DNA of 64,000 nt, from assembly GCF_963506605.1 (NCBI RefSeq), contig NC_083278.1, forward strand, positions 36,952,001-37,016,000, given 5' to 3'. Of this stretch, positions 1,292 to 57,000 are shown piece after piece. This DNA is from Zootoca vivipara (lineage: Eukaryota). Within the stretch, counting starts at the first letter, position 1; the number at the start of each line of letters is the position of its first letter. A model generated the notes under the pieces. The model searched no databases, was not told the DNA's origin, and worked only from the letters and a program-made list of their open reading frames with translations. The translations under genes were made by a program, and so were the position numbers.

Positions 1292-34740
<33,449 letters not shown>

Positions 34741-39582: not shown

Positions 39583-42351
39583 GAAATACAAAACATTCTC
39601 TCATCCAGCAAAGATATTTGGTAATTAATATTTGAAAATGATAAATTATGGTCAAGAACAATTGTTTCATTATTAAAACTGACATGTAAAAATGGTTTCT
39701 ATTGTTTTTCTTATAGAAATTGGTATGAATAAACATATACAAAAAAAAATAGCTCTGAAATGAAAATATATTGAATACAATGAGGACTCTTAACTTACAC
39801 AACCTCCAGTAGTGCCTGGTGTATAGTGGGATATCTTCAGATATATGCCCTAAAGATGTCATCTAGGCTGTGAAATGGTACCTTGGAGTCCATGTAAGCT
39901 TCCTCGCTGACATTAAGATGAGATCTTCTCCATGTATACATAAATAATGTTACGCTTGACTGTAAACTCAACATTTTTTTTACCTTGAGGCGGCTGACTA
40001 CCTCTAACGCGGCATCTACAAGCCCATATGAGAATATAACTTGGCAGGCGACTTTCTTGACACCGTAAAATAAATAGATGAAGATTAGTTAGCTCAACTC
40101 TTACAGGTATTGGCTCTGAGTAAACATTTAAGAGAAGCAATTAGCCATGGTATTGTTTATATAAGCTGTATTGCCTAAATGCACGCAGGAAGGAGAGATG
40201 GTTCAGGGCACTAGGATTATACCCAGAGCAGAAATGCACTTGATAATTAAAGGAAAACACCTGCCGCTCCAAAAAAAAGAAAGGAAGCAATGCTAGCACT
40301 AGTAAAAGACTTCCCCTTAGTGCTCGGTTCCTAAGCACACCTAACTTTAAATAATTCTGGCTTTGGATATTCTGTACACCTGGGGGGGGGGGGTGAAGAA
40401 GGACCTCTAAGCTGTGCTGTCCTTGCTGCTTTAGAATATTTGAAATTGAGGCTCGTGCATATTCCCGGCTGGCTGTAGGATTATGCACATGCACCAACCT
40501 ATCTAACAAGTCTCTCTACCCCCTACTTGCTGCAGACACCTGAAACACTTTGTTTTTACTGGAAGCAATTCGGATCACTACCAGTTATGCAGTGCTTAGC
40601 ATGCATTGAAGGTTCTGCACAACCTATTATTCCATTTAGACAAATGACCCAGCACAGAAGTGTGGGTTGTAGTGTGTGTGTGTGTGTGTGTGTGTGTCCA
40701 TTTAAAAAAAACTTACTAGATGTGCCTGCATGTTGCTAGTTGATAAGTCTTGTACAGTAACTAATCACACCACATTAGTGGCTTGGTGTCTGTTCTGTGC
40801 GAACAAAAACAATTACTGCAATCTATCACAACCATATGATAGCAAACACATCGCTTCTTATACACACAGCCTAAAATTTACAGGCCGATTCTCAAAAGGA
40901 TATAGGGAAATCTCTTAGCAATTATAGTTAAAATAAAAATGCCCACTTAATGTTTTTAATATCTGTAAAAGAACAGCATTGTGGGGTTTAGTTTCTGTCT
41001 GTCTTATTGTAGGTCACTTTAGGTTGCGCTGAACAAGAGAAAGTGACTAACAAATTTAATAAAGACTTAAAATAATCACTGGTGGTGACGGTTAGGGCTG
41101 AAAACCCCATTGTAAGCTTTCAATACGATTCTCCAGTAATTATAATAAAACAGTTACTACCGCATAATTGACAATCATTACAGTAATTAGTATATGTGTC
41201 GGCCACTTTTCTGTTCATTTATTTTGGGATAGAATTTCCAGCAGAGACTTCTGCATCTGAATCTAAGCTTTAAAATAACAAAAATATTTATCATATAAAC
41301 ACTGTACAGTAATTAAATACATTTAGCACTGCATTCGTGATAACATGGATATTATGTAATGGAGGACAACAGTTTTGACGGAAAGTAGATGCAGCCACCT
41401 TGTTTTTTACTCAAATATAAACTTCAGTTAATGTGTTCACTGTTAGGGAAAAAATGGGTTGCCTTCTGAAGCTCTGTTGTTGCCTCCCTCCTCCCCCAAA
41501 GACTCCATTTATCCGGGTGAGTGAACTTGGTATTACCAGCAGTCCTCTTGGTGAAAATCTGTGGAAACAAAGTGCCAATAATGTGGCCAACATTGACTCA
41601 AAAAACACTCAGAGCTTTCCCCCAAATTCCAGAGTTAATTTCTGGAGTGACACTTGCCCCACACCTTAGACTTCTCTTGAGATAAATTACTGGCCAAAAT
41701 TCATCAGAAAATAACTATTACATTTTCTGAGAATATTTTATTCTTTGGACTCCTCCTGAATTGCTGGATACTTCTATTCCCACCAAGAGTATTTGGCAAC
41801 CACTCCGCCCACTAACAGAGTTAAACACAGATCCAGTTTTAATACTGTTTAGAATTGCTGAAGGAAGCAATTCCATCTTTGCCTTACTCCAACTTACCAG
41901 TGCAAACAAAAATGTATGTATGTATTATACTAATCATTAACTGAATTGAAATTTCACGGTAGAAGTTTCTGTGAATGTTTGAGAAGTCCACTACCCCACT
42001 TGGACACAAGATCTGGGAAAGTGCTTCCCTTCTCCAATGCCCACACCATGCTGGACGGGACGGGATGACAGACATTTTGCTCACCCCTAGAATCCAGTTT
42101 ACAGAATCCAGATCCTCTCCTTCAGTAGTTTGTATCAGGCCTTTGTAGCGCTCAGTTTTTGTTTACTTTCGCACCACTCTTCAATGATTGTTTAGGCTAT
42201 TTTAAAAAGGGCTCAACTATAGCAGTGGCAAATAAATGCAACTGAAGTGTGTTTTGTTCTCTGACTCTCAAAGGCACATATATATTTAGGGGAGGTTTCC
42301 ACACAATAACACTATTATATAGAGCTATTTACAAAAATAAAAACCACAAAC

Positions 42352-42429
42352 CTTTATGCCCGCTGACTGTTGCCTAGAATTCAGGGCGTCAGATACTAAC
42401 TCAGCAGTCTTTGCTTTGTATCAGGTGGT
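42352..42429 (-). CDS. IMPG1: IMPG1 terminal coding exon; (R)[10 protein letters not shown] when joined directly to the EGF exon (stop 42398-42396)
   Basis: ccttcttttccttacag|A acceptor; the RxPD start resembles human RLPD (recalled); possible donor AAG|gtttgt at 42352. Confidence 0.72.
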
Positions 42430-45042
42430 CTGTAAGGAAAAGAAGGATATGAATGTTTACCGCATGCTGGTGTGTGCAAGCCATCAAAGCCAAAAGCTAG
42501 AGCAGAAAGTGCTAACAGTGCAGAAGTGCTAACAAGAATGTTCTGGTCTGAAGCTGTGACAGAGGTTTTAGAGACATTGAGGGTTAGTCCTTTTTAGTTG
42601 TGAAACACCAAAGGCAAGTTGAAGTTGGTTGTTAACAAGGGCAACTAAGAGAAGACCCATTTTGAAGAGGAACGAGTAGTATTTGCATGCATTTTACCTC
42701 CATTCTCTGTTCTGTGGTCATGCTTTTGCAGTTCTCGATCACTGCTCTCTGAAGGACTGATACAAGCACTTACATTACAGGGCCCATGACACAAACTACT
42801 GATGGGTTCATGGTGGTCAAAGGCAGGATTAATTCTGACAGCATTCTCTGTGTTGCTTTGGCTGAGAGGAGGACCTCTACAAGGCAGAACATGTTTGTTT
42901 AGGGTAAGACTTCCTGTCTGTAGTTTTTAAAAGTTCCAAAAAAAACTGTTGGGGGAGGGTTAAGCTGCTTACTCCAGTTTAGGCTTGGTATTGCATTTTC
43001 TTCGCAACTTATATATTAAAGTGATGAGAAGAATAACTAGGCTTAATAAGCCAAGCATCAAAGCTTTGGAGATGTTGGACCGGGTAGGTGCTGGAGCGTA
43101 TTTTGCACAACGCCCTTGGCTGTTTCTACGGGCTGGGCATCTAAAACATGGAGGGAAAGGGAAGCAAAGCAGTTTTATGTCAAAACAAGGGCATGCAGGA
43201 AAAACAATTCAAAACAGGTTCTCCATGCCTGTCCTAAACTCTTCAATCTGTGTTTCAATGCTGCATTTACTGTATATTTATCAGCCGGCACCCAAAGTGT
43301 AAGTAGACACAGTGAAACTTCCCTTTCCTATCTTTCTCCCAGCTCAGATATGCTCCAGGGGTCCCCACCATCACTTGGAGGCACACAGGGGCAAGAGAGT
43401 GAAGGGGAAGTCCTATAGCTCATGTGGATGTCAATTCCACAAGCGGGCTGATTCCACTGAATGCCAGTCATTTATAGGATAGCTCATTTGGGTAGAGCGT
43501 GGTGCTGATAATGCCAAAGTTGCAGGTTCGATGCCCCTAGAGGACAGCTGACTATTCCTCCATTGCAGGGAGTTGGACTAGATTATCCTCATGGTCCCTT
43601 CCAACTCTGTCATTCTATTCCATATTAACTTTTTAATTGTTTGATTTCTTCTTGTAAGACACCCTGAGGACTGCCATAGAGTGCGCTATAAATGCTGTAC
43701 ATAAATTATGGTAATAATACTGTAATAGAATTGCTAATAATAATAACATGGTGTAAGTGGCTGGCAGGCAAATATGTGTTCATTCAGGTTCATTTCCTAT
43801 ACAGAGACATCTCCCACCACAAGCACGGCGAAGCCTCAGATACTTACCTCATGAAGCTCCATATGCTCACTTGGAATGGTGGAAGGTCCTATAAGGAAAA
43901 GAGCTTGGAGCAGGTCTTCCTCACAAGAGGTGCCCGGGGGGCAAGGAAAGGCCAACCTCCCATTTTAGAATATAGAAGCGGGGGGTTGTATCCAAAGCAA
44001 CACAGCGGAGTTCTGCTGGGGCAACGACATTTCCTCTCCTCACTCGACCCACTCCCAAAATGTTCTCCAGAGCATCTCCCAAACCCTGGAGCTGATTTTG
44101 AGGGTGTGCAGGGGGGGGGGGGCTTCAGGGGAGAGGAGGGAAATGTTCCGTTCTGCTAGCGCGTGTCCCTTGCAATAGCAGAACAGGTGCATACCAGGTA
44201 TGCAGCACATGCATTCCTCTCTCCATAACAGGCATGGATATAGGGAGGTTCACATTCTTATTTTGTTTTTCTGGTATGCCTGGTGAGGCGACTGAAGGAC
44301 TTCCTGTCAGTATCTATCAAATATGCTACGAGGAAACTCCCAAGATTACCTCCTTCAATCTACAGATTCTTAAAATGAGCTAAATCTAAACAAAGCGTCT
44401 GATCCATTACACAGCTGACAAGTACATGTAATCTGACAAAAATAACATTTAACGTTGAAGCCCTTTCTGCTGGGCTGCATGAAGTAGATTCCAGCTTATG
44501 GCAAACAATAGAGGTGGGAAGTCAACGTGACCATGTGGAAACCCAAAACTTGATGCTGAGCACAGGCTCATAACAAAGCACTGGCCCATTTAGACCAGTA
44601 TTGTTACCATGACAACCAGGAGCTCTCCTGGGATCTTCCCAGTCCTGCTACCAGAGAGCTTTACAATTGGGAATTTTCTGTAGGGATGCCATAAACCACT
44701 GTTCCCTCCCTAGTCAATGTCTAACCAAGAATAATGGCTGCATTCTATCATGTGATGCTGTTTGCATGATGCAATAGATTCCATAATATATTTCAAATTC
44801 TACAGCAGCATTGATATTCATAATATTCATAATCACAATCGGTCCTGCCACCCTCACAGGCATACTTGGTAGGGATGTGGGGAGAGGGCCTTCTTAGTGA
44901 CTGGCCCCAAAACTTTGGAATTCTCTCCCTGGAGAAGCTAGACTGGCTCCTTCCTTGTCCGGAAGGACAAGAAGGAACAGACTTCTTTTAATGAAAGGGC
45001 TGGTGCCCTGCTGCTTTTATTGTAAGTATCGGTGTGTTTTTA

Positions 45043-45082
<40 letters not shown>

Positions 45083-48000
45083 TGTGTGTGTTTGATTGGT
45101 GTTTAATTGTTTTATAATTATTTTTAAAACAAATAATTTATATTAAAAATGTTTTTAGCTGTTCTTATTTTCTCTCTTTTAAGCCGCCTTGAGTCCCTGG
45201 CCAAGGGAAAGAGAGGGATAAAAATAAATACATATTAATATAATAGTGATGGCACTTACCTACACACTGCCCCTCTTCCTGGAACCAATTCACACTTGCC
45301 ACCATTAACACACAAGTGTGGCTCAATCTCACACAGGCTACGGCACGGCAGACCATCTCTTCGTACATAACCAGGCTTACAAAGGCAATCGGCCTCTTTC
45401 GTCCAGTCGTTCTTTACGCACTGTGAAAATTCGTCGCATCCCATGAACTTGCAAGGATCTGCTTGATCAGCTGTAAAAGAAAAGGATAATCTTTTTTTTA
45501 AAAAAATGGGTCCATTGCTGCAGTGCCACATATCACTTGGCAAAAACTTACTCTTCACTGAGGAGGGAAACAGGAGCTCTCCACAAATACGAGTCTATCA
45601 GTAAAATACATCTTAGAAAAAGAGCCAGCATCATTTTGCTTTTACAAACTGCAGTTATGGATTCTTTTCTTTGGTGATCTGGCTTTCTGTTTACTTGATT
45701 CTCCTGCCTGTGACAGTCATATGCTCAGACTAATAAAGGAGCTGCATATTACAAATAGTAGGAGCCCTGTATCTAGTGCTCCTCTCCATGTCTTAATATA
45801 ATTCATCCCACGTTCTAACCAGCTTGGCTTAGTATGCAAGGAATTGCCGGTGCTGGCATTGGTATAACCAAGAAGCTATGGCATGGCTGGCAGGTAAGGG
45901 CGTTCTGGGCAGGCTGTGACACAGAAGCCCACCTGAAAATGGCCCGAGTCCCACCAGCGGTTCCTAGTCTACTGTTTGAGAAACACTGGTCTAATGACAC
46001 CACTGGTATTTATTATAACATTTATTTTTAAATACTTTTTTAAAAATTTATTTTTAAATACTTTTAAAGTATTTTTAAATACTTTTAAAGTATTTTTAAA
46101 TACTTTAAGTGCTATAAGATTTCTTATCTGATCTTTTTGGAAATCCTCTTGAAGATCTCCCAACTCTTAGAACCACTAGCTAGGAACAACTGCGGGAGAG
46201 CGCTACTACTCTCATGCCCTGCTTGTAGGATTCCTGAAGGCAACTGTTTGAGTACTGTGGGAAGCAGGATCCTGGCCATTGGTCTGATCCAGCAGGGCTT
46301 TCATTTCTGGAAAGGAGTCCTCTTCCCTCTCCGAAATAGTCTGCTACCCACGCAAGCCTGTGACTCATAGCTGCGTGTGTCACTTGGCTCAGTTTCCTTG
46401 GCAGTCTTGCCTCATCTCCAAATATCTGAGAACCAGTATGTAGATCTTTTTCTCATTTTTCCACAACACTGAACTTTTAATTTTATATCTCCCAGGCTTT
46501 TTTTTTTTAAAAAAAGAGAGAGAATGTAACAGTGTTGAAAAAAATCCTTTAGGATATCCTAAGGAAACTGGTCCAAGTAATTGTGTGCCTTGCACCGAAT
46601 TTATTAGAATATCCGTTATTCTAGCAATCCCCAACTAGTCTTACAACACTGAAATAAAAGCCATCCTTTAATCTGGAGATTATATATTTCTGCAGAATCT
46701 TAGAGACAAAGTTGGTTCAGACATAATCCTATTTTTTCAAGTAATGAGTTTTCATCCTACCCTTAAACAAATAGGAAAGCAAGATATATTTGTTCTTCTA
46801 CATATAACCAATCAGGCATTTGTCGACTTCAGTTTTCATTCATAGTTCATTCATTCATCTATTCCAGGGTTTCCCAAAATTTTCAGCTGTTTTTTGGACT
46901 ACAACTCCCATCATCCCTAGCTAGCAGGAACAGTGGTCAGGGATCATAGCAGCCAACTCCTAGGCCTCCCCATAAAATATTTGAGGGACCCCCCAAGTTA
47001 TATAGGTGTTGCCATTCAAATGGTTTGTGAATCTTGTGATTATGTGGGGGGGGGGACTTACCTGGATCCCCCAATATTTTATTCCACTTGGGACCCCTGT
47101 CAGAGATGATGGGAGTTGTAGTCCATCAACAGCTGGAGACCCAAGTTTGGGAAACCCTAATCTAGTCCCATCCCTTGCTCAGTGCAGGAAATCCAGACCA
47201 AGAGCATTCCCCAAGAGATGGATCTCCAAAGAATCTCATGCGCTGCCACCCAGGTAAATGGTTCCACTGTTGAACTGTTCCTAGAGAGCAGCCCTGGTGG
47301 ATCAGAACAGTGACCCATCTAGTACTACCAGTATCCTGTTCTATTAGCTGCCTGTGGGAAGCCCACAAAAGGAAGCTGACCACAACCACACCTGACTGAT
47401 GATTTCAAACAACTGGTACTCAGAAGCATATTGCCTCCATCAGTGGAGGAACAACATAGCTATTAGGATTAGTAGTCACTGGAAGCCTTAGCCTCTATGA
47501 ATTTGTCTAATCCTTTTATAAAGTCATCCTGTTACTTAATCCCATTAGATCTAGACCTGCCCTCTCGGGCAGCAGACAAGATGTCTCTGCCCTCTTGTAG
47601 GTGACAGTCCTTCAGGTATCTGACTACAGCTATCATGTCCTCTGTGTCTTCCCTTCCCCAGGATAAAGAGACCTAGTTCCTTCACCCGTTCTTCATAGGA
47701 CTTCTTTGCAATACCCTTCACCACCGTTGTCCTCTGAACCAGCTCCAAATGTCTACAACCTTCTCAAACTGCAGTGCTGAAGAACCCCCAGAGGAGGCCT
47801 GGCTACTGCAGTGTCTCATCCCTTCAGACCTACATAAAAACAAATGATCAACTATGTTTGGTTTCGCTTACAGTGCTTTTTGCTGCATTTAATCTCACAT
47901 TTTAATCCACAAACTTTGTTCTAGTTAGGAAAGGGGCACAATTTAACACCCATCTTGTTTATCTCATTTAAATGCGCCATCAGCATTCCAGGATGTGGGG

Positions 48001-51000
48001 TAGAAGGAGGATCCTCCAGGACTGTTGTCAAGACAACATTTTAAAGTCATGAATGTTGGCAATGGCAGCAGAGTCATGATAATGCCATGTCAACATACTA
48101 CGGAAATTTTCTTCAGCGGAACCTGAAGTGCCTCACATCTGTGGGAGGATGAGGACAGAAGTTCACAAAGAGTTGTGAATGCATCTTTGCTTAAAATGGG
48201 GAGGGACTAAAAGCCAGAACGAGTACAGCCACAAGTACACAGTGACACACGCAACTTCAGATAAGTAGTTCACATTGCACAGTTGCTATGCCATCTTGAG
48301 ATATTTCTCCCAGTTCCTGTCTGTGATTGCATTAAGGTTCTCTCCGTTACTGTAGCCTGGCTGCCAGCCTCCTCACCCTTCCTTGGTCAGCAGACAGTTT
48401 TCTGTTGTTAAAAATGCACACTCAGCTTCCTACTCCACCCAAGCATATAACCTCAATTTAGCAATGTGCTTATCTCGCAGCAGGGTACCCAGTGCCCATT
48501 ATGCCATGTTCCTGAAGTGTGACTCTTCAAAGGAATGAGAACTCAGGACTGTAATGCCTGATGAACTCTTTCACCAGTTTTGTAGAATGGGTGGCCAAAT
48601 AAACAGATGCTCTTGAGTGCTGCAGCTGCCGTAGGAAGTGTGTGCAAATCAGCAGAATAACTCAATGACAGCAGCATGTTGATCAGAAAACCAAGTGAAC
48701 CTTGGGCTATGTTGGGACCATAGCTGCCAAGCACCCCGTTTTCCCTGGGAAACCCCCGTTTTTACTTACCTTTTCCCGGTGGTCCCCCGTATCACTTCGT
48801 CTCCCGTTTTTCTCCGTTATTTTCTCCTGCCGGCGGCCATTTTTTTCTTTCTGATTTGCCCATCTATGGGCACAAAAAATGGCCGCCGCCGGCTTCAAAA
48901 GTCGCATCTACACATGACCGTAAGTGCGTAGACGTCACTTCCGGTGTCGGCGGCGGCCATTTTGGGTGCCCATAGATGGGCGGGGCAACACCGGAAGTTG
49001 TGTTGATGCACTTCCGGTCATGCGTAGAAGCTGCTTTTGAAGCCGGCGGCAGCCATTTTTGGTGCCCATAGAAGGGCAAAGCGACACCGGAAGTTACGTC
49101 GACGCAACTTCCGGTGTCACGCAGCAGTCCGGGACTTGGAAGGTAACGTTGGGACATGTGAGATACATTCTGGGAGCACATTCTCCACAGTTTTCATTCT
49201 ACTCTTAGATCTGCTTGTGGGAAAGGTCAATTCATTAAAAGAGAGACTCAGTTCTCTGCCATGTTCTACATGATGTTTGGCCGGACATTGGCCAGGGCAC
49301 TGAACAGCTAGGAAATCTCCCCACAGCCTTACAGGAGCTGCTCCCAATGAAAAGCTGCAACAGACCTGCAGCTGCAGAAGGATTGTTTCAGTCATCAGGC
49401 TGGGCCCTCCCAGCCAGCAGCTTTAACTGGCAGAAGATCCTTGCTGCTGCTTCACTTGGCAGGATGGGCCTCTTACTCTTGAGTGATTATGTTGGTGCTC
49501 TCTGTAAGCGTGAAGTACATAGAACATTTGTCAGAACTCCCACTGACTTCATTTGGACTGTGGGCAAAATAATATCTTCCTCGATTTTGGCCTATGCATC
49601 CCCTTTTTCAATAAAAGTAAATATGCAGTAGAGTCAGATTCTCTCTAGTACCCTTTTGTCAATGCTAAGGAATGCTTAAGAGCTTTACATTTTGTTATAC
49701 AAATAAATAAGTGCAAACAACATGTGCCTTGTTTAGCTTAGAATGCATCTATAAATGGCAATGTTTCTTGTCAAAATACGCATTTCCCCAATTGCTATTT
49801 TCTGTTGATAAAAAACAGCTATTTAAGCTCTTGGGCTCTGTGCCATGTTTCACAGGATTCTCAGGAGGGACCCTGATCATGACTTAGAGACAACCTGGGG
49901 CTTTTCATTCTTCCCGTCTTACAGAAAGCAACCAACACCATGAAATGCTTGCAGGAGAGCAATGTTTCTTCCCCCACTGCCCCAGTTTTTTTTTACATCA
50001 CCTGGCTCAATATCAAGGGAATAGCTGTCAATTTCAAGGTTAAGGCGCTGAGCTGCTGCATCACAAAAATCCTCCAGCACACAATGGACAGCCTCTGTGA
50101 TGTTGTACGGCACTGACTTCGCAAACTTCATTTTGCTGTTGACAATCACACTTCCATTGCGGAAGTTCAGTATTTCCAGTTGCTTGAAGCCTGTTAGGTT
50201 GGACTGTAGGTAAGGAAGAAGCTACAAAAAGAAAAAAGAAAAAGAAATAAATGAGAAAACTTTAAGTTAGTGGTGTTCAAACTTTTTTCAAAGAGGGCCA
50301 GATTTTATGAAGTGAAGGGCCATGACCAAAGGGTCAACCAAAGTTGTTGAGCTTTTTTTAAGGTTGGAGTTGTTGAGGTTTTTTTATGGTTTTACCCCAG
50401 GAAATAAACTGCCACAGGGGCTGGATTAAACCGACTGGCGGGGAGGTTTAGTCCCCTGAAACAGACTTTGGACATGCCTGCTTTAAATCCTCTATCACTG
50501 CCCACGTATCATTGATTCCACTTATATTCACTTTTCATTTTGGGGAACATAAATCATCTGCTCTGTTTCACTGACTTTATTAGCAGACTTTACATCTGCT
50601 ACCAGGTTAAGTTTCTCAGTTAGTCTTTAACTGTCTCTCTGGTTAGATCTTCTTCAATAATCTATTAAGATAGATAGAGTGCTGTTTTCCTTCTAATTAA
50701 ATTTCATAGGCTGCAATCCAGTTAAAAAAGAAATCAATGGGACTTAAGCATGCTCAAATGTGAATTGCAGCCATGGGCAAGGCAGTTCTATGGTTTCAAG
50801 AGGGTTTTGCGTGTTGTTAGTTGTTAAATTGAAAAAATGAGCCTTGGATATTTATGTCCCAGCCGCCAAAGTCAACAACGGGTACTTGTGTATACTGGGA
50901 GCTCTGCATTGCATAGCCAATAACTTAGCATGTTTTGTATGTTCTTTCATGGCAAGGAGAGCTAACACCCTCCAGCTATGATTACTCACACTTCCAACCT

Positions 51001-54000
51001 CAGCCTTCTGGCTAAGGAAGCCAAAATTGTCCTGCCCTGCAATGGCAGCAGCAGTGATCAGAGGTAGCTAAGGTAGTTCAAGGGATGCCATCCTTTTTAT
51101 CTTCTGGCGCTGGTTTCCCTTCATGCACACCTAAAAGGGAGGCCCTATCCTCTCATGCCTGCTGGGCTCTGCTTTATGGGATAAGTTAAAATATTCTCTC
51201 TCCAGCCTCCCCTCTTTCAGAGGTGCTGGTGATAGAGCCGCAGTTAGAGAGGAAGACTTTAACCACCACCTAGCTAGATACACAACTCAGGTGAAGTACA
51301 ACCCACCTGAGGGAAGTGCGGATTTTGAAAAATGAGTGTGTTTTGGGTTTTCTATTGTTTCAGAAAGCACAGGTTAGGTTTGCCGTTAAGTGTGAATTGA
51401 CTTCCTCTTCCAACCCAAGTTGAGGCAGGGATGAGGTTGAAACTACATCATCATCATCATCAAATTTCTTTGCTGCCCTTCATCACATGTGATTAGCATC
51501 ATGAACAGAGTTGGGTTGTAAGAAGAGCAGGTGCCACTTTTCTTTTTAAAATGCTTTTCATTATTTGGAATTTGTTTTTAACTTGGGGAATGGCAGGGGG
51601 GGAAATAACAGCTTGCAAATATAAATGCATTGAAAGCAACTCTTTGCTACCTACCAGCTGCATGAACTGCTGTTCGAGTGCTTTGTATTCTGAGGAACTC
51701 CGATTGAAGAGGTCATCGGAAAACCGCATGTTGGTTACTCTCAAGCTGAAGAAGACTACTAGCTCTTTGCCTTTGGCTACAGTTGTCATTGAGCTGGTGG
51801 TTACGTACTTCAGTGGAGGAGCTGGAGTCATATCCGGAGTTTCAGGCAGCGCATAGTAGCCACTTCCATCCTCACTAATTGTTGCTGGCCTCATGATGTC
51901 AACCGTATCTAGTTCAGTAGCAATATCTTGCACCCCCATGTCAAATCCTGTAGGGATGTCACTGTCAGTCACTGCCCACCCAGAGCTTGTTGCTTCAAAA
52001 GACTGGTCAATGACAATGGAAGGACCACTGGTAGTCACAGCAGGCAATAAAATGATCTGATCTGTAGGCCCCAAAATATCTTCAGGAAGAGAGGTGGGAA
52101 GAGCAGGAGAACCAATGACATACGGTATAGTACTTATTGCAGCCAAAATCTCATCGCCTGAAGATTCCAGTTCATCAGTAATCTTTGCATCTAGAAAGGA
52201 AACAACACGTTGAAGAACAAAAACACTGTAGAAAACCCACATTTAAGGTCTGCTATGGAAGATGTCGAAGTGGAATTGTTTACCTATTGTGGCATTTATG
52301 CCCTACTTTCCACTTAAAACACGCACACAAGGTGACTAAAGAATAATTAAAATCCAATTCAGGTAACTGAAATGACAGTAATTCAGCAAAATACAAATCA
52401 AGGTGCCTTATTAAAATGTCAATAAGCTGCAGCAAATAAATACAGGAATTCAACTCCAATCCATTATAGTCTCAAAAGTCCAACAGAACAATAGTGTCCT
52501 AGCTAACCACCTGGCTGCGTGAAAGTGAGGCATCCATCCATATGGAATGAGTTCCACAAGGACTTACCCACACCTCCTCTTCTACAAACACACCACAGTG
52601 GTACCTCTACTTACGTTCACCTCTGGTGACGTATGCTTCGGGATACGTACACGGCAAACCCTGAAGTATTTTTCTGGGTTTCGCCGTGTGCACATGTGCA
52701 GAAGCGCTCTACCGTGCCATGCACATGTGCAGAAGCGGTCCCTCCGGTTGTGGAAACCTCAGGATCTGACTGCGGGTTCGGAACGGATCCCGTCCGCAAC
52801 TGGAGGTACCACTGTAATTCAAACAGAGGTGTTATGCACCTGCAGTTGACATCGGGGGGGGGGGGAGGTAAGCCCTGCCTTGCATAATTGACCACCAGAC
52901 ATGGCACACGCACACCATTTGAATGGCAACGCCTATCAACTTTGGAAGACCCTGCCCCCTCAAATATTTTATTGGGGGAGACCGAAGGGACCTCGGCCCC
53001 TGGGTGTTGGCTCCTATGAATGTGTGTTATCTCAAAAGGAGACCCTATGCATGTGCAGCTGCATAATACTGTGCATGATTTGAAACCCTACATGGTGAAC
53101 GTCCCCAAGTGGATAGAGAGCTCACACTATAATAACAATAATTTATTTGTACCCTGCCCATCTGGCTGAGTCTCCCCAGCCACTCTGGGCGGCTCCCAAT
53201 AGAGTGTTAAAACAATACAGCATTAAATATTAAAAACTTCCCTTCAGATGTCTTTAAAAAATAGGATAGCTGCTTATTTCCTTGACATCTGATGGAAGGG
53301 CGTTCCACAGGGCGGGTGCCACTACCAAGAAGGCCCTCTGTCTGGTTCCCTGTAATCTCGCAATGAGGGAACCGCCAGAAGGCCTCGGCGCTGGATCTCA
53401 GTGTCCAGGCAGAACGATGGGGGTGGAGACGCTTCTTCAGGTATACAGGACCGAGGCCGTTTAGGGCTTTAAAGGTCAGTACCAACACTTTGAGTTGTGC
53501 TCGGAAACGTACTGGGAGGCAGTATAGATCTCTCAGGACCTGTGTTATGTGGTCCCGGCAGCCACTCCCAGTCACCAGTCTAGCTGCCACATTCTGGATT
53601 AATTGCAGTTTCCGGGTCACCTTCAAAGGTAGCCCCACGTAGAGCGCATTGCAGTAATCCAAGCGGGAGATAACCAGAGCATGCACCACTCTGGCGAGAG
53701 AGTCTGCAGGCAGCCTACGTACCAGATGGAGCTGGTACACAGCCGCCCTGGACACAGAATTAACCTGCGCCTCCATGGACAGCTGTGAGTCCAAAATGAC
53801 TCCCAGGCTGCGCACCTGGTCCTTCAGGGGCACAGTTACCCCATTCAGGACCAGGGAGTCCCCCACACCCACCCGCCCCCTATTCCCCCAAAACAGTACT
53901 TCTGTCTTGTCAGGATTCAACACTCCTTCAGATGTATATGTGTAGGCTGCCCTTTTCAATTGTGCTGAATGCATGGATGGCAGAGCAGGCAGAATGCATG

Positions 54001-57000
54001 ACACTGTGGACGGTGCCCGTGGGTACAGTTCTTTTCTGCCCCCCAGATAGCCATTGTGTCACTTTTAGACATTTCCCCCTAAACTATTATTTTAGTAATG
54101 ATAACTCTACATGATTACTTTCCTAATTTATCTTAGGTCACCAAATCTCCTTACAGACCGCCCCCTCCCAATAATGTTTTCTCCTAAATGTGCAAAGGCT
54201 TTGGTATTCTGTACAGAAATATAGAGTACTCAAGAGTCTGTAACCAAAAGAAATATGACAGGAAAGGGAATTAGGAGCACAGCATAAAGATAAAGGGATG
54301 ATGACAATTATTTCAAGAATAATTCACTTCAGTAGTATTGTGTCCTACAAGTTGCTATGCTGACATTTCTTGCTCAGAATCTTCATTTTTACGATTAAAT
54401 CTTCAGCAACTAATTGGTTTGACAAACTGTCGCACCTTTGATGCATGTGCAATTAGGTGCAAATTAGATGACAATGATTTGCCTTTGGTTTGAACATCAA
54501 AATGGTAAAGCTGGCTATCTCCTCGTGTGTAGTCAATACAAATTTGCTGAACACACTTATGCACATTCTTCAGTTATTCCACAAATTCACTGATTCAATA
54601 TTTCCTTAATAACTTGCCAATATACCTTGGTCAAAGGCTGAGTGGTTGCAAGACACATAAGTGGGTTACTGTTGACTTTTATTTAGGTAATTATCTTTTA
54701 ATGAAGTTTGTGTGTGACTGGGTGCAAATGAATGAATATGGTGGAATAACTTACATTTTGTTTGAACGCAGTGATTTAATTCCTTTTTGTGAATAGATTT
54801 AGGTCTGATCTGCAGTTTATTCCCCTCCACAATCCTAGTGAGTGTGGCAAAACAGATAACTCAAGTCTCTGCCATCATTTCTCCTATGCTACTGACTTGT
54901 TCTGCTATTGCAGTGCTGCTGGCAAGGAAAAAATGTCTTTGAAGTTACATTACACTCACCCACCCTATATAATCACTGTTTAGAGACCCCTTACCAGGAG
55001 TGATTCCTACAACGGCAACAGGTGAGGACAAACATCAGTGTTGCATGGACACTGGCTCCAGGGAGCCTGTTTCTCAGATATTTCTCATTGTCACCTACTG
55101 ACTTAGAAGCAGGGAGCTTCAGTGCTCAAGTTGGTGGGGGAGAATTATTACCCAAACTGTGGCATCATCCCCCTACAAAAAAGCAGATAGGCTTACTACT
55201 ACTTAGGAAAACTGAAACTTTTTTAGCTTATACATTCTAAAAAGCTGTACTTCATAAACTTAATATTCTCACCACCACCACCAAGTACCTAGAACCTTGA
55301 GTAAATTTACTGATCTGAACCGCAAACAGGTTGGGCAACAGGTGAGGTTGAGAAGACCTAACAGCATACAGAGGCTATAAACCTTGTCCCTAAATACACA
55401 TTCCTAAGATCATCTATCAAAATAGCTTCCAAGGGTTTGGTGGCCTTACATGAAAGNNNNNNNNNNNNNNNNNNNNNNNNNNNNNNNNNNNNNNNNNNNN
55501 NNNNNNNNNNNNNNNNNNNNNNNNNNNNNNNNNNNNNNNNNNNNNNNNNNNNNNNNNNNNNNNNNNNNNNNNNNNNNNNNNNNNNNNNNNNNNNNNNNNN
55601 NNNNNNNNATGCAGGGGGTTGAACTAGACGATCCTCATGGTCCCCTTCCAACTGCACAATTCTATGTTTCTATGTCAAACTATATTGAAGGTAGAAAATA
55701 GATTTATATACTCACTAACAGAAAAAAATGTTATAAGCAAAGCTTCTCTAAAACAGAACCAATTAACAACTCATGGGAACAGATTAAAATTATGAAATGG
55801 ACAGCTACGGTGAAGGATACCAAAAAATTACAAAAATGACTTACAGAAACGGATCCCTGTGATTCAATGCAGGCAACTCTCCATTTGTATGGGGTTGCGT
55901 CAGCACATAAGCCCATTCTGCCCCCACCCCATTCTGCCGATTCCACCCCTTTCCAGGGACAAAAATGATGTGTGTCTCAGTAGCTGCATGTCAGTTGGGT
56001 ACGTGCAAAATGGTTGTTGCCTGTATATGGGAGAGAAGTTAGGTTTTACAGGAATAGAAGTAGTTTACTATACAAGGTAGTAATATTTATGTGTTAAGTT
56101 TTCATATGAATCTATTTTATAAACAGTTGATAATAAAACATCTAACATGCACACAAGATAGATTAAAACTACGTCTTCATTATTAATACTTTCTCTGGTA
56201 TTGTGAAGAAATTCATTTCATGAAAAAAAAATGCAATCATTACAGTATGCTTATTATTTGCCACTGTATTTTCTGGGAAGGCACTATTTATTTCTGCTTA
56301 CTGTACTTTAACTATTTTGGGCAGCTTAGAGAATTAGTGTTTCCTAATGAAAGGATTATAAAGTGAGAGCCATGCTACTGAATTCTATAAGAGTACCAAA
56401 ACAGCGTGAGTCTAATTAGATGGCTAATATGACAGGAGGGGAATTGCAGGTCAGAGGAGGCCTATGAAAGAATCCTTTATCCGTAACTCAATTTCCTGTT
56501 TTGCTTTTATATTTTGTTGCCTCTCAAGTGCTGTTTTTTTTTTAAAAAAAGAATATGTAAGGACTACCAAAACATTATAGAAAGCAACACGCAGTTTAAG
56601 AACAAAAAGGCGTATGCACAATCCAACAGTGTTAAATCTGGGTTAAGTCCACTCAGTGCTTTTTTTTTTTCTTCTGGTGGTGTATTTTTCTGCCCCAAAT
56701 CAGAGCCTCACATCTCCTTCCCAAAGCTGGGTAACTTTCTGCCCTAGCTTAGGGACAGAGACATGATGCTCTGGCAGGGTCCGATAGCCCTCCCTTGCAT
56801 GGTGAGTTTTTCTAGAAAAAAAGCACTGAGTCCACTAATTTAAACAATTTCTCAGGGCAGAATATTATTCATTTGATTAGAATCTATAGGTAAATTTTCA
56901 GGTAAAAGCTGTTTACATTGGAATCCTGTACCCAAAAGAACATTTCAAGACAGAAAATGAAATAAGCAGCAAGTAGGTATGTATACTGAAGAACTGAGGA

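What the first reader, a model, noticed from the sequence alone, without database searches (positions are those of the whole stretch)
42352..45260. Candidate splicing switch for secreted versus membrane IMPG1, using one terminal exon in several frames
Seen: the exon starting at 42429 ends the protein in all three frames. Direct joining from the EGF exon (phase 2) gives [11 protein letters not shown], a secreted form with incomplete EGF-2. Joining from the tail exon's distal donor at 42698 (phase 1) gives DHLIQSKDC*, the membrane form. Joining from the proximal donor at 42774 (phase 0) gives TT*. If the donor at 42352 is used, these stops lie 44, 49 and 69 nt upstream of the junction, so by the 50-55-nt rule only the third should trigger NMD. 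Inference: skipping two exons converts a type-I membrane protein to a soluble one, and the mammalian secreted gene could have arisen by fixing the skipped isoform.
Basis: inference. Interest (0 to 1): 0.78.

Follow-up and report, generated by a model that had tools for sequence, protein, structure and literature searches.

The report
Lizard IMPG1 membrane and secreted forms
This is the 3' end of the common lizard's eye-matrix gene IMPG1, whose last exons can probably be spliced to give either a membrane-anchored or a soluble protein; public gene models of related lizards, birds, frogs and fish already show this, but no paper found here describes it.

Summary
All exon edges, phases, three end peptides and the 44/49/69-nt distances reproduce. 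Stops in all three frames are not special in themselves: 36% of comparable 78-nt stretches have them.

The window is Zootoca vivipara IMPG1, lying tail to tail with MYO6. Version .2 instead reads through the distal donor.

- the skipped secreted form;
- distal donor to last exon;
- proximal donor to last exon;
- read-through.

Pairs of membrane and skipped models also exist in Anolis, Pogona, Hemicordylus, Sphaerodactylus, a crow, Xenopus and three fishes. Monotreme and marsupial IMPG1 end in the skipped-frame peptide, and a platypus model keeps the membrane exon.

Direct RNA evidence here is thin: one contig joins the membrane exon to the tail exon. Nothing shows use of the 42429 exon, the skip junction or the 42352 donor, so the NMD part is unsupported.

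No paper found describes a membrane IMPG1. Verdict: real and sensibly read, already present in annotation. Moderate interest.

The parts
50002..50221 (-). SEA-2 exon of IMPG1; the GSVIV self-cleavage-type motif is encoded at 50155-50141
   Evidence: Pfam SEA hit; tblastn to P0171; edges and motif position
45260..45470 (-). EGF exon: EGF-1 plus the first four cysteines of EGF-2. Its donor leaves 2 nt.
   Evidence: 71 of 71 residues identical to Zootoca RefSeq protein P0171; phmmer gave 250 relatives
42973..43140 (-). TM exon (168 nt, phase-preserving): last two cysteines of EGF-2, a hydrophobic span, then a basic KLRRK stop-transfer stretch
   Evidence: identical in P0171; conserved in 21 sauropsid models
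42877..42972 (-). 96-nt intron between the TM and tail exons, removed in one contig of run X8
   Evidence: joint 42876|42973, ends CT..AC on the + strand, 1 contig, depth 2.7, 70 letters on the shorter side
42698..42876 (-). Cytoplasmic tail exon with RINPAF. It has an internal proximal donor after 42774 (the gtaagt that encodes the conserved Val-Ser) and a distal donor after 42698.
   Evidence: RINP.F.H.EP and VS.C invariant in 21 sauropsid models; both donors used in Lacerta/Podarcis models
42645..42697 (-). Read-through extension of the tail exon, ending at TAG 42647-42645; it gives the end of RefSeq XP_034965452.2
   Evidence: ORF 42648-42926; P0277 tail; stop
42352..42429 (-). First 78 nt of the last exon, closed in all three frames (stops at 42423-42421, 42403-42401, 42398-42396). 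The candidate donor after 42352 is unproven. The exon more likely runs on to the poly(A) signals at 41843 or 41742.
   Evidence: no reads here
34459..34740 (+). Last coding exon of the convergent neighbour MYO6 (marks the locus as IMPG1 by gene order)
   Evidence: Pfam Myosin-VI_CBD E=1.6e-17; ORF list

Best explanation
This is the 3' end of IMPG1 of Zootoca vivipara. The gene encodes a type-I membrane proteoglycan: SEA-2, two EGF repeats, one membrane span, and a short cytoplasmic tail with an NPxF motif. Alternative 3' processing is expected to give two kinds of product.

(a) Membrane forms keep the TM exon (43140-42973) and the tail exon. They end in one of three ways: by reading through the distal donor to TAG 42647-42645, by splicing from 42698 to 42429, or by splicing from 42774 to 42429. 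The last exon is then read in two different frames.

(b) A soluble form joins the EGF exon (45260) directly to 42429. It reads the third frame, which is the ancestral one shared with mammalian IMPG1.

A TM-exon-to-42429 join is also frame-compatible.

Shown: the exons, frames and splice signals; identity to RefSeq models; the TM-to-tail junction in RNA-like data; and the same isoform set in models of relatives.

Inferred: that Zootoca makes the skipped form, and that the choice is regulated. Also inferred: because SEA-2 carries GSVIV, both kinds of product probably release the same large ectodomain. They would then differ mainly in whether the EGF-bearing stub stays in the membrane.
For: - Exon anatomy.
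- P0277 (version .2) shows the read-through end.
- Lacerta agilis X1-X6, Podarcis muralis and P. raffonei models carry all four 3' structures.
- Pairs of membrane and skipped models exist in 13 named species plus platypus.
- In the tree, TM and skipped rows mix within one IMPG1 clade (100/100), with 9 sets of identical rows in more than one group. IMPG2-type tails form the other clade.
- 149 of 168 IMPG1-type TM tails carry [NS]Px[FY].
- 26 of 146 alignment columns are invariant across 21 sauropsid tails, among them RINP.F.H.EP.
- One X8 contig splices 42973 to 42876.
- The skipped frame differs less than the membrane frame among four lizard lineages: 14 of 48 versus 22 of 42 residue comparisons.
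Against: - No read covered the 42429 exon, and no 45260-42429 joint was seen. Only one low-depth contig from a run whose RNA nature is a guess supports any junction, and it runs 64 nt plus 9 loose letters into the upstream intron.
- RefSeq lists a single Zootoca protein. Its newer version does not use the 42429 exon for coding.
- All isoforms of the relatives are computed XP models. I could not see their RNA support.
- The frame-constraint count rests on four lineages and 7-8 residues.
- SEA-2 cleavage is inferred from a motif only.
Confidence: 0.7

Rival explanations
1. Membrane forms only. In Zootoca the EGF-to-42429 skip is not made at a meaningful level, and the skipped models in relatives are rare splicing noise picked up by automatic annotation.
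For: RefSeq has a single Zootoca protein, in two versions, both with TM. The only junction seen here includes the TM exon.
Against: Skipped models recur in 8 lizard species, a crow, Xenopus and fishes. The skipped-frame peptide is conserved from fish to marsupials and varies less than the overlapping membrane frame in lizards. It is the only end seen in 5 of the 8 marsupial models I looked at.
Confidence: 0.2
2. Secreted form only. The TM and tail exons are decaying relics of an IMPG2-like ancestor and are no longer used.
For: Mammalian IMPG1 is described as secreted and without a membrane span (PMC9478142 and PMC9498744, passages seen).
Against: Both exons are open, have canonical splice sites and are spliced to each other in an RNA-like contig. 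They are 50-55% identical to bird and turtle tails, with invariant motifs, and both Zootoca RefSeq versions include them.
Confidence: 0.04
3. The donor at 42352 is used, so the proximal-donor form (stop 69 nt upstream) is degraded while the other two escape.
For: The distances 69, 49 and 44 nt are correct, and an AAG|gtttgt site exists.
Against: No read, joint or model seen here uses that donor. The site is a weak match to the donor consensus. Poly(A) signals lie 586 and 687 nt into the exon. The convergent MYO6 transcript seems to reach about 41300, which leaves little room for another exon.
Confidence: 0.07

Closest known systems
RefSeq IMPG1 isoform sets of Lacerta agilis (X1-X6), Podarcis muralis and P. 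raffonei
   Same: They have the same exons and the same four 3' structures: read-through, distal donor to last exon, proximal donor to last exon, and skip of both exons. The tails are 94% identical to the Zootoca tail.
   Different: They are computed models of other species. Zootoca has one listed protein only. Zootoca lacks one codon in the tail exon, and its membrane-frame end is one residue longer.
IMPG2 (SPACRCAN)
   Same: SEA, SEA, two EGF repeats, one membrane span and a cytoplasmic NPx[YF] motif; SEA-2 with a GSxxV-type site (PMC9478142 passages).
   Different: It forms a separate clade with 100/100 support, has a very different and much longer tail class, and this locus lies beside MYO6.
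Mammalian IMPG1 (SPACR), described as secreted
   Same: It is the orthologue. Monotreme and marsupial proteins end, right after the EGF exon, in a peptide homologous to the skipped frame of the 42429 exon.
   Different: Papers state that only IMPG2 has a membrane span (PMC9478142, Fig. 1 legend passage). No therian TM model was seen, but one platypus model has one. Eutherians were not examined here.
Soluble isoforms made by skipping a transmembrane exon, e.g. L1CAM delta-TM under NOVA2
   Same: Skipping a cassette removes the membrane span and releases the ectodomain (PMC6398979; search listing and start of abstract only).
   Different: Here two exons are skipped, and in sauropsids the shared last exon changes frame. 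No splicing regulator is known.
Exons read in two frames by alternative transcripts (CDKN2A INK4a/ARF, GNAS XLas/ALEX; recalled, not checked here)
   Same: One stretch of DNA is translated in more than one frame, depending on the upstream exon.
   Different: Only the last 2-10 codons overlap here, so the dual reading adds short end peptides and not whole proteins.

Membership tests
IMPG1 orthologue | Protein identity to annotated IMPG1 of the same or a close species | tested here: met
   tblastn of P0171 (Zootoca XP_034965452.1) on the window: EGF exon 71 of 71, TM and tail exons identical, one V/A difference in SEA-2
IMPG1 orthologue | SEA domains and C-terminal EGF-like repeats | tested here: met
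   Pfam SEA on two exon translations (E=2.8e-6 and 9.8e-6) and on P0171 (E=5.1e-30). EGF models score only below their cut-offs, but the 6+6 cysteine pattern is present.
IMPG1 orthologue | Groups with IMPG1 and not with IMPG2 | tested here: met
   Tree of 66 of 276 eligible rows: IMPG2-type tails form one clade (100/100), and P0171 lies among lacertid IMPG1 on the other side
IMPG1 orthologue | Gene order next to MYO6 (the human arrangement is recalled, not checked) | tested here: met
   Myosin-VI cargo-binding and lever-arm Pfam hits on + strand exons, with the last coding exon at 34459-34740
Membrane/soluble switch by TM-cassette skipping | Cassette exons with canonical splice sites and frame-compatible ends for both inclusion and skipping | tested here: met
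Membrane/soluble switch by TM-cassette skipping | Both inclusion and skipping transcripts observed in this species | tested here: inconclusive
   Only the TM-to-tail junction was seen, in 1 contig of 1 of 4 runs laid. There was no coverage of the 42429 exon.
Membrane/soluble switch by TM-cassette skipping | Both forms present in orthologues | tested here: met
   13 named species plus platypus have both kinds of model
Type-I membrane protein | One hydrophobic span after the ectodomain, followed by basic residues | tested here: met
   The TM exon translation has a hydrophobic stretch followed by KLRRK; the hydropathy filter classed the tail as TM. The signal peptide lies outside the window and was not tested.
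NMD-regulated isoform | Stop codon more than 50-55 nt upstream of a spliced downstream junction | tested here: inconclusive
   The distance of 69 nt holds only if the 42352 donor is used. No evidence of its use was found.
Self-cleaving SEA domain | GSxxV motif in SEA-2 (as in PMC9478142) and cleavage of the protein | tested here: inconclusive
   The GSVIV motif is present at 50155-50141. Cleavage itself cannot be tested with these tools.

The most novel reading that the evidence does not exclude
IMPG1 was ancestrally a type-I membrane proteoglycan with a conserved NPxF cytoplasmic tail, and it still is one in fishes, frogs, lizards, turtles, birds and probably monotremes. The textbook 'secreted' IMPG1 is the TM-skipped splice form, which became the only product in therian mammals. 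In sauropsids a length change in the tail put the membrane form into a second frame of the last exon, and the proximal donor into a third. That tiny multi-frame exon has been kept since before birds and lizards split. If so, the dependence of mouse IMPG1 on IMPG2 for its placement could be a consequence of IMPG1 losing its own anchor.
Probability: 0.45. Interest if true: 0.6.

Novelty: new member of a known kind. Interest (0 to 1): 0.42.

Why it matters
Work on the interphotoreceptor matrix, done mostly in mouse and human, treats IMPG1 as a purely secreted partner of the membrane protein IMPG2. The models gathered here suggest that in most vertebrate groups IMPG1 has its own membrane anchor and a conserved sorting-type motif, as well as a skipped soluble form. 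Those groups include the chick, frog and fish used as eye models. This affects how knock-outs, antibodies and localisation studies in those animals should be read. It also gives a concrete, testable account of how the mammalian secreted gene arose. The facts are already in public annotation, so the gain is in noticing and testing them, not in discovering new sequence.

Tried and rejected
- Three-frame stops as a signal in themselves: rejected, because 36% of comparable stretches have them.
- The gene being IMPG2: rejected.
- The TM and tail exons being relics: rejected.
- Read evidence: the run search listed 22 runs, none on record as an RNA holder. I laid 4 of them (X1, X8, X20, X21) on 39700-45600. 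X1 gave 12 records, none on an exon. X20 gave 5 reads and X21 gave 1, again none on IMPG1 exons. Only X8 gave a junction. X1's word share of 0.28 was not explained by what was laid.
- Eutherian IMPG1 ends: not among the 120 listed of 542 hits. I ran no further search on them.
- tRNA-like origin of the high-copy repeat at 43443-43639: ARAGORN found nothing.
- Literature: five searches and passages of five papers gave no description of a membrane IMPG1 or of this splicing. Subscription papers are not in the library, and I opened no supplements; they may bear on this.
- That NCBI computes alternative isoforms only with transcript support is recalled, not checked.
Full report
**What is in the sequence.** The gene lies on the minus strand.
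- The EGF exon is 45470-45260 (211 nt). It enters with 2 nt, leaves 2 nt, and has the donor TAG|gtaagt.
- The next exon is 43140-42973 (168 nt, phase-preserving). It supplies the last two cysteines of EGF-2, a hydrophobic span and a KLRRK stretch.
- The tail exon starts at 42876. It has a perfect internal donor after 42774 (AAT|gtaagt, phase 0) and a second donor after 42698 (GAG|gtaaaa, phase 1).
- The last exon starts at 42429, behind a strong pyrimidine tract.
- The three frames of 42429-42352 read [12 protein letters not shown] and HLIQSKDC*. The stops lie 69, 44 and 49 nt before a possible junction at 42352.

I checked junction codons by phase arithmetic and did not assemble a joined model.

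**Is it more than chance?** Not in itself. Of 4414 78-nt stretches that follow any AG on this strand, 1602 (36%) are closed in all three frames, and 249 (5.6%) are closed within the first 34 nt. The pattern gains meaning only from the comparison below.

**Which gene and which animal.**
- Pfam finds SEA domains in the exon translations at 49922-50221 and 51502-52242.
- The + strand carries the 3' half of MYO6: Myosin-VI cargo-binding domain and lever arm, with the last coding exon ending near 34740. The two genes converge. As far as I recall, human MYO6 and IMPG1 are arranged the same way; I did not check this.
- A phmmer search with the EGF exon alone found 250 proteins at E<=1e-3, of which 150 were listed.
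- A word search with the C-terminal part of a hit (Sceloporus IMPG1, P0152) found 442 proteins, of which 120 were listed. Among them was P0171, 'interphotoreceptor matrix proteoglycan 1 [Zootoca vivipara]', XP_034965452.1.
- tblastn of P0171 on the window gives 71 of 71 identical residues in the EGF exon, identical TM and tail exons, and a single V/A difference in the SEA-2 exon.

The window is therefore Zootoca vivipara IMPG1, or a very close relative.

A tree of the 180 residues ending at the EGF exon used 66 of 276 eligible rows. It puts all IMPG2-type tails in one clade (100/100) and places P0171 among lacertid IMPG1 on the other side.

- Its later version, XP_034965452.2 (P0277, 809 aa), instead reads through the distal donor to a stop at 42647-42645.
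- The sister genera carry the whole set:
  - Lacerta agilis X1, X2 and X5 read through.
  - X3 ends in GHLIQSKD.
  - Podarcis muralis and P. raffonei have the same four ends.
This is also frame-compatible in the window, because the TM exon keeps the phase.
- Sphaerodactylus X4 skips the TM exon alone.

**How wide the pattern is.** Models with and without the membrane span from one species were seen in:
- lizards: Lacerta agilis, Podarcis muralis, P. raffonei, Anolis carolinensis, A. sagrei, Pogona vitticeps, Hemicordylus capensis, Sphaerodactylus townsendi;
- a bird: Corvus moneduloides;
- a frog: Xenopus laevis;
- fishes: Pseudorasbora parva, Cyprinus carpio, Denticeps clupeoides.

In the tree, 9 sets of identical rows fall in more than one tail class. 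The two classes are therefore isoforms of one gene, not two genes.

The 420 proteins fetched sort as follows:

| Class | Number |
|---|---|
| IMPG1-type TM tail | 168 (149 with an [NS]Px[FY] motif) |
| IMPG2-type tail | 51 |
| Short skipped-type end | 65 |
| Stops at the exon end (fragments) | 67 |
| Other | 50 |
| My end-of-EGF pattern absent | 19 |

In frogs and fishes both forms read the last exon in the same frame. In lizards, turtles and birds the membrane form reads it in a second frame (ends such as GHQMSLQNQD) and the skipped form in the ancestral one (ends such as RSPDQFTKPRLTS). The multi-frame use is thus a shared sauropsid trait, not a Zootoca oddity.

**Are the TM and tail exons under constraint?** I aligned 25 chosen tails. 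Among the 21 sauropsid tails, 26 of 146 columns are invariant. These include RINP.F.H.EP and the Val-Ser that in Zootoca is encoded by the proximal gtaagt. The Zootoca tail is 94% identical to Lacerta and Podarcis, 62-71% to other lizards, 50-53% to turtles and 51-55% to birds.

For the overlapping codons of the last exon, four lizard lineages differ at 14 of 48 positions in the skipped frame and at 22 of 42 in the membrane frame. PPD is invariant in the skipped frame, while the overlapping membrane-frame residues vary. This is a small sample, but it points to selection on the skipped-frame peptide, and so to that form being made.

**Mammals.**
- Echidna and platypus IMPG1 end in RFPDDSTKSTVIS and RSPDDSTKSTRRS.
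- Of the 8 marsupial models I looked at, 3 end in a clearly homologous peptide (for example RSPDHSLKPELTS), 2 stop at the exon end, and 3 have other ends (the two Sarcophilus models and Macrotis).
- A UniParc entry (P0194) is 99.2% identical to platypus IMPG1 over the shared parts. It continues from the EGF exon into a hydrophobic span and a tail with SPVF.

Eutherian proteins were not among the rows listed, so that step is not shown.

**RNA evidence in this species.** The run search listed 22 runs, none on record as an RNA holder of the stretch. I laid four of them on 39700-45600.
- One 311-nt contig of X8 (RNA by guess only, depth 2.7) joins 42973 to 42876 with GT..AG ends on the gene's strand. 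The TM-to-tail junction is therefore real.
- The same contig runs 64 nt, plus 9 loose letters, into the intron upstream of the TM exon. That looks like partly processed transcript.
- No read or contig lay on the 42429 exon. No 45260-42429 joint was seen, and nothing used the donor at 42352.
- X1 gave 12 records, none on an exon. X20 and X21 gave 5 and 1 reads, also none on IMPG1 exons.

**The NMD argument.** The arithmetic is right, but the premise is unsupported.
- AAG|gtttgt is a weak donor.
- Poly(A) signals lie at 41843 and 41742 on the gene's strand.
- X8 contigs and + strand poly(A) signals suggest that the convergent MYO6 3' UTR reaches about 41300.

The simplest reading is an unspliced last exon, in which case none of the stops is premature.

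**How it most likely works.** The donor of the EGF exon chooses between the acceptor at 43140 (membrane forms) and the acceptor at 42429 (soluble form). Within the membrane branch, the tail ends by read-through or by either of two donors.

If that cleavage holds here, both branches release the same large ectodomain. They would differ in whether the EGF-bearing stub is tethered and carries an NPxF sorting motif. This step is inference.

**What is known.** Papers state that IMPG1 is secreted and that only IMPG2 has a membrane span (PMC9478142, Fig. 1 legend and introduction passages; PMC9498744, passages). Five searches and passages of five papers turned up no description of a membrane IMPG1 or of this splice choice. 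Supplements were not opened and subscription journals are not held. The sequence facts, however, are in RefSeq. The finding is an independent and correct re-derivation of annotated isoforms from raw sequence, together with a reasonable evolutionary reading.

**Verdict.**
- Observation: confirmed.
- Interpretation: partly supported. The main idea is supported, the NMD part is not, and expression in Zootoca is untested.
- Novelty: a new, unpublished member of a well-known kind.
- Interest: moderate.

Noticed in passing
window 1000-34740, + strand: The 3' half of MYO6 (lever arm, tail, cargo-binding domain), convergent with IMPG1. The last coding exon ends near 34740.
   Followed up: partly
window 39700-41300: X8 contigs (depth 2-7) and a few X20 reads cover this stretch between the two genes. 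It is probably a long MYO6 3' UTR, since + strand poly(A) signals lie at 41144 and 41312. The X20 first mates lie on the + strand, which in a stranded library would mean minus-strand RNA; there are too few reads to tell.
   Followed up: partly
window 43443-43639: A very high-copy element in the intron (summed contig depth 175 in X1 and 151 in X8), SINE-like by eye. ARAGORN finds no tRNA there.
   Followed up: partly
window 45032-45101 and 40664-40706: Simple dinucleotide repeats that the reads tool skipped. The first lies in the intron after the EGF exon.
   Followed up: no
window 50002-50221: One residue differs from the RefSeq Zootoca protein (A in the window, V in P0171). This points to another individual or assembly.
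   Followed up: no
window 42698-42876: The Zootoca tail is one residue shorter than the Lacerta and Podarcis tails in the stretch after SESSD. The gap is in frame, so the exon phases are unchanged.
   Followed up: partly
window 53210-54058, minus strand: A 283-codon open stretch inside an IMPG1 intron that looks like the end of a retrotransposon reverse-transcriptase gene. Not searched.
   Followed up: no
   Followed up: no
proteins P0196 (Lagopus), P0193 (Gavialis), P0195 (Chelonia): These models go from the EGF exon into the tail without a membrane span, and the Lagopus tail has NSAF in place of NPAF. This is either loss of the TM exon in some lineages or gaps in the models.
   Followed up: no
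run X1: X1 held 0.28 of the sampled words of 41000-45600, yet only 12 records were laid, none on exons. The mismatch is unexplained.
   Followed up: no
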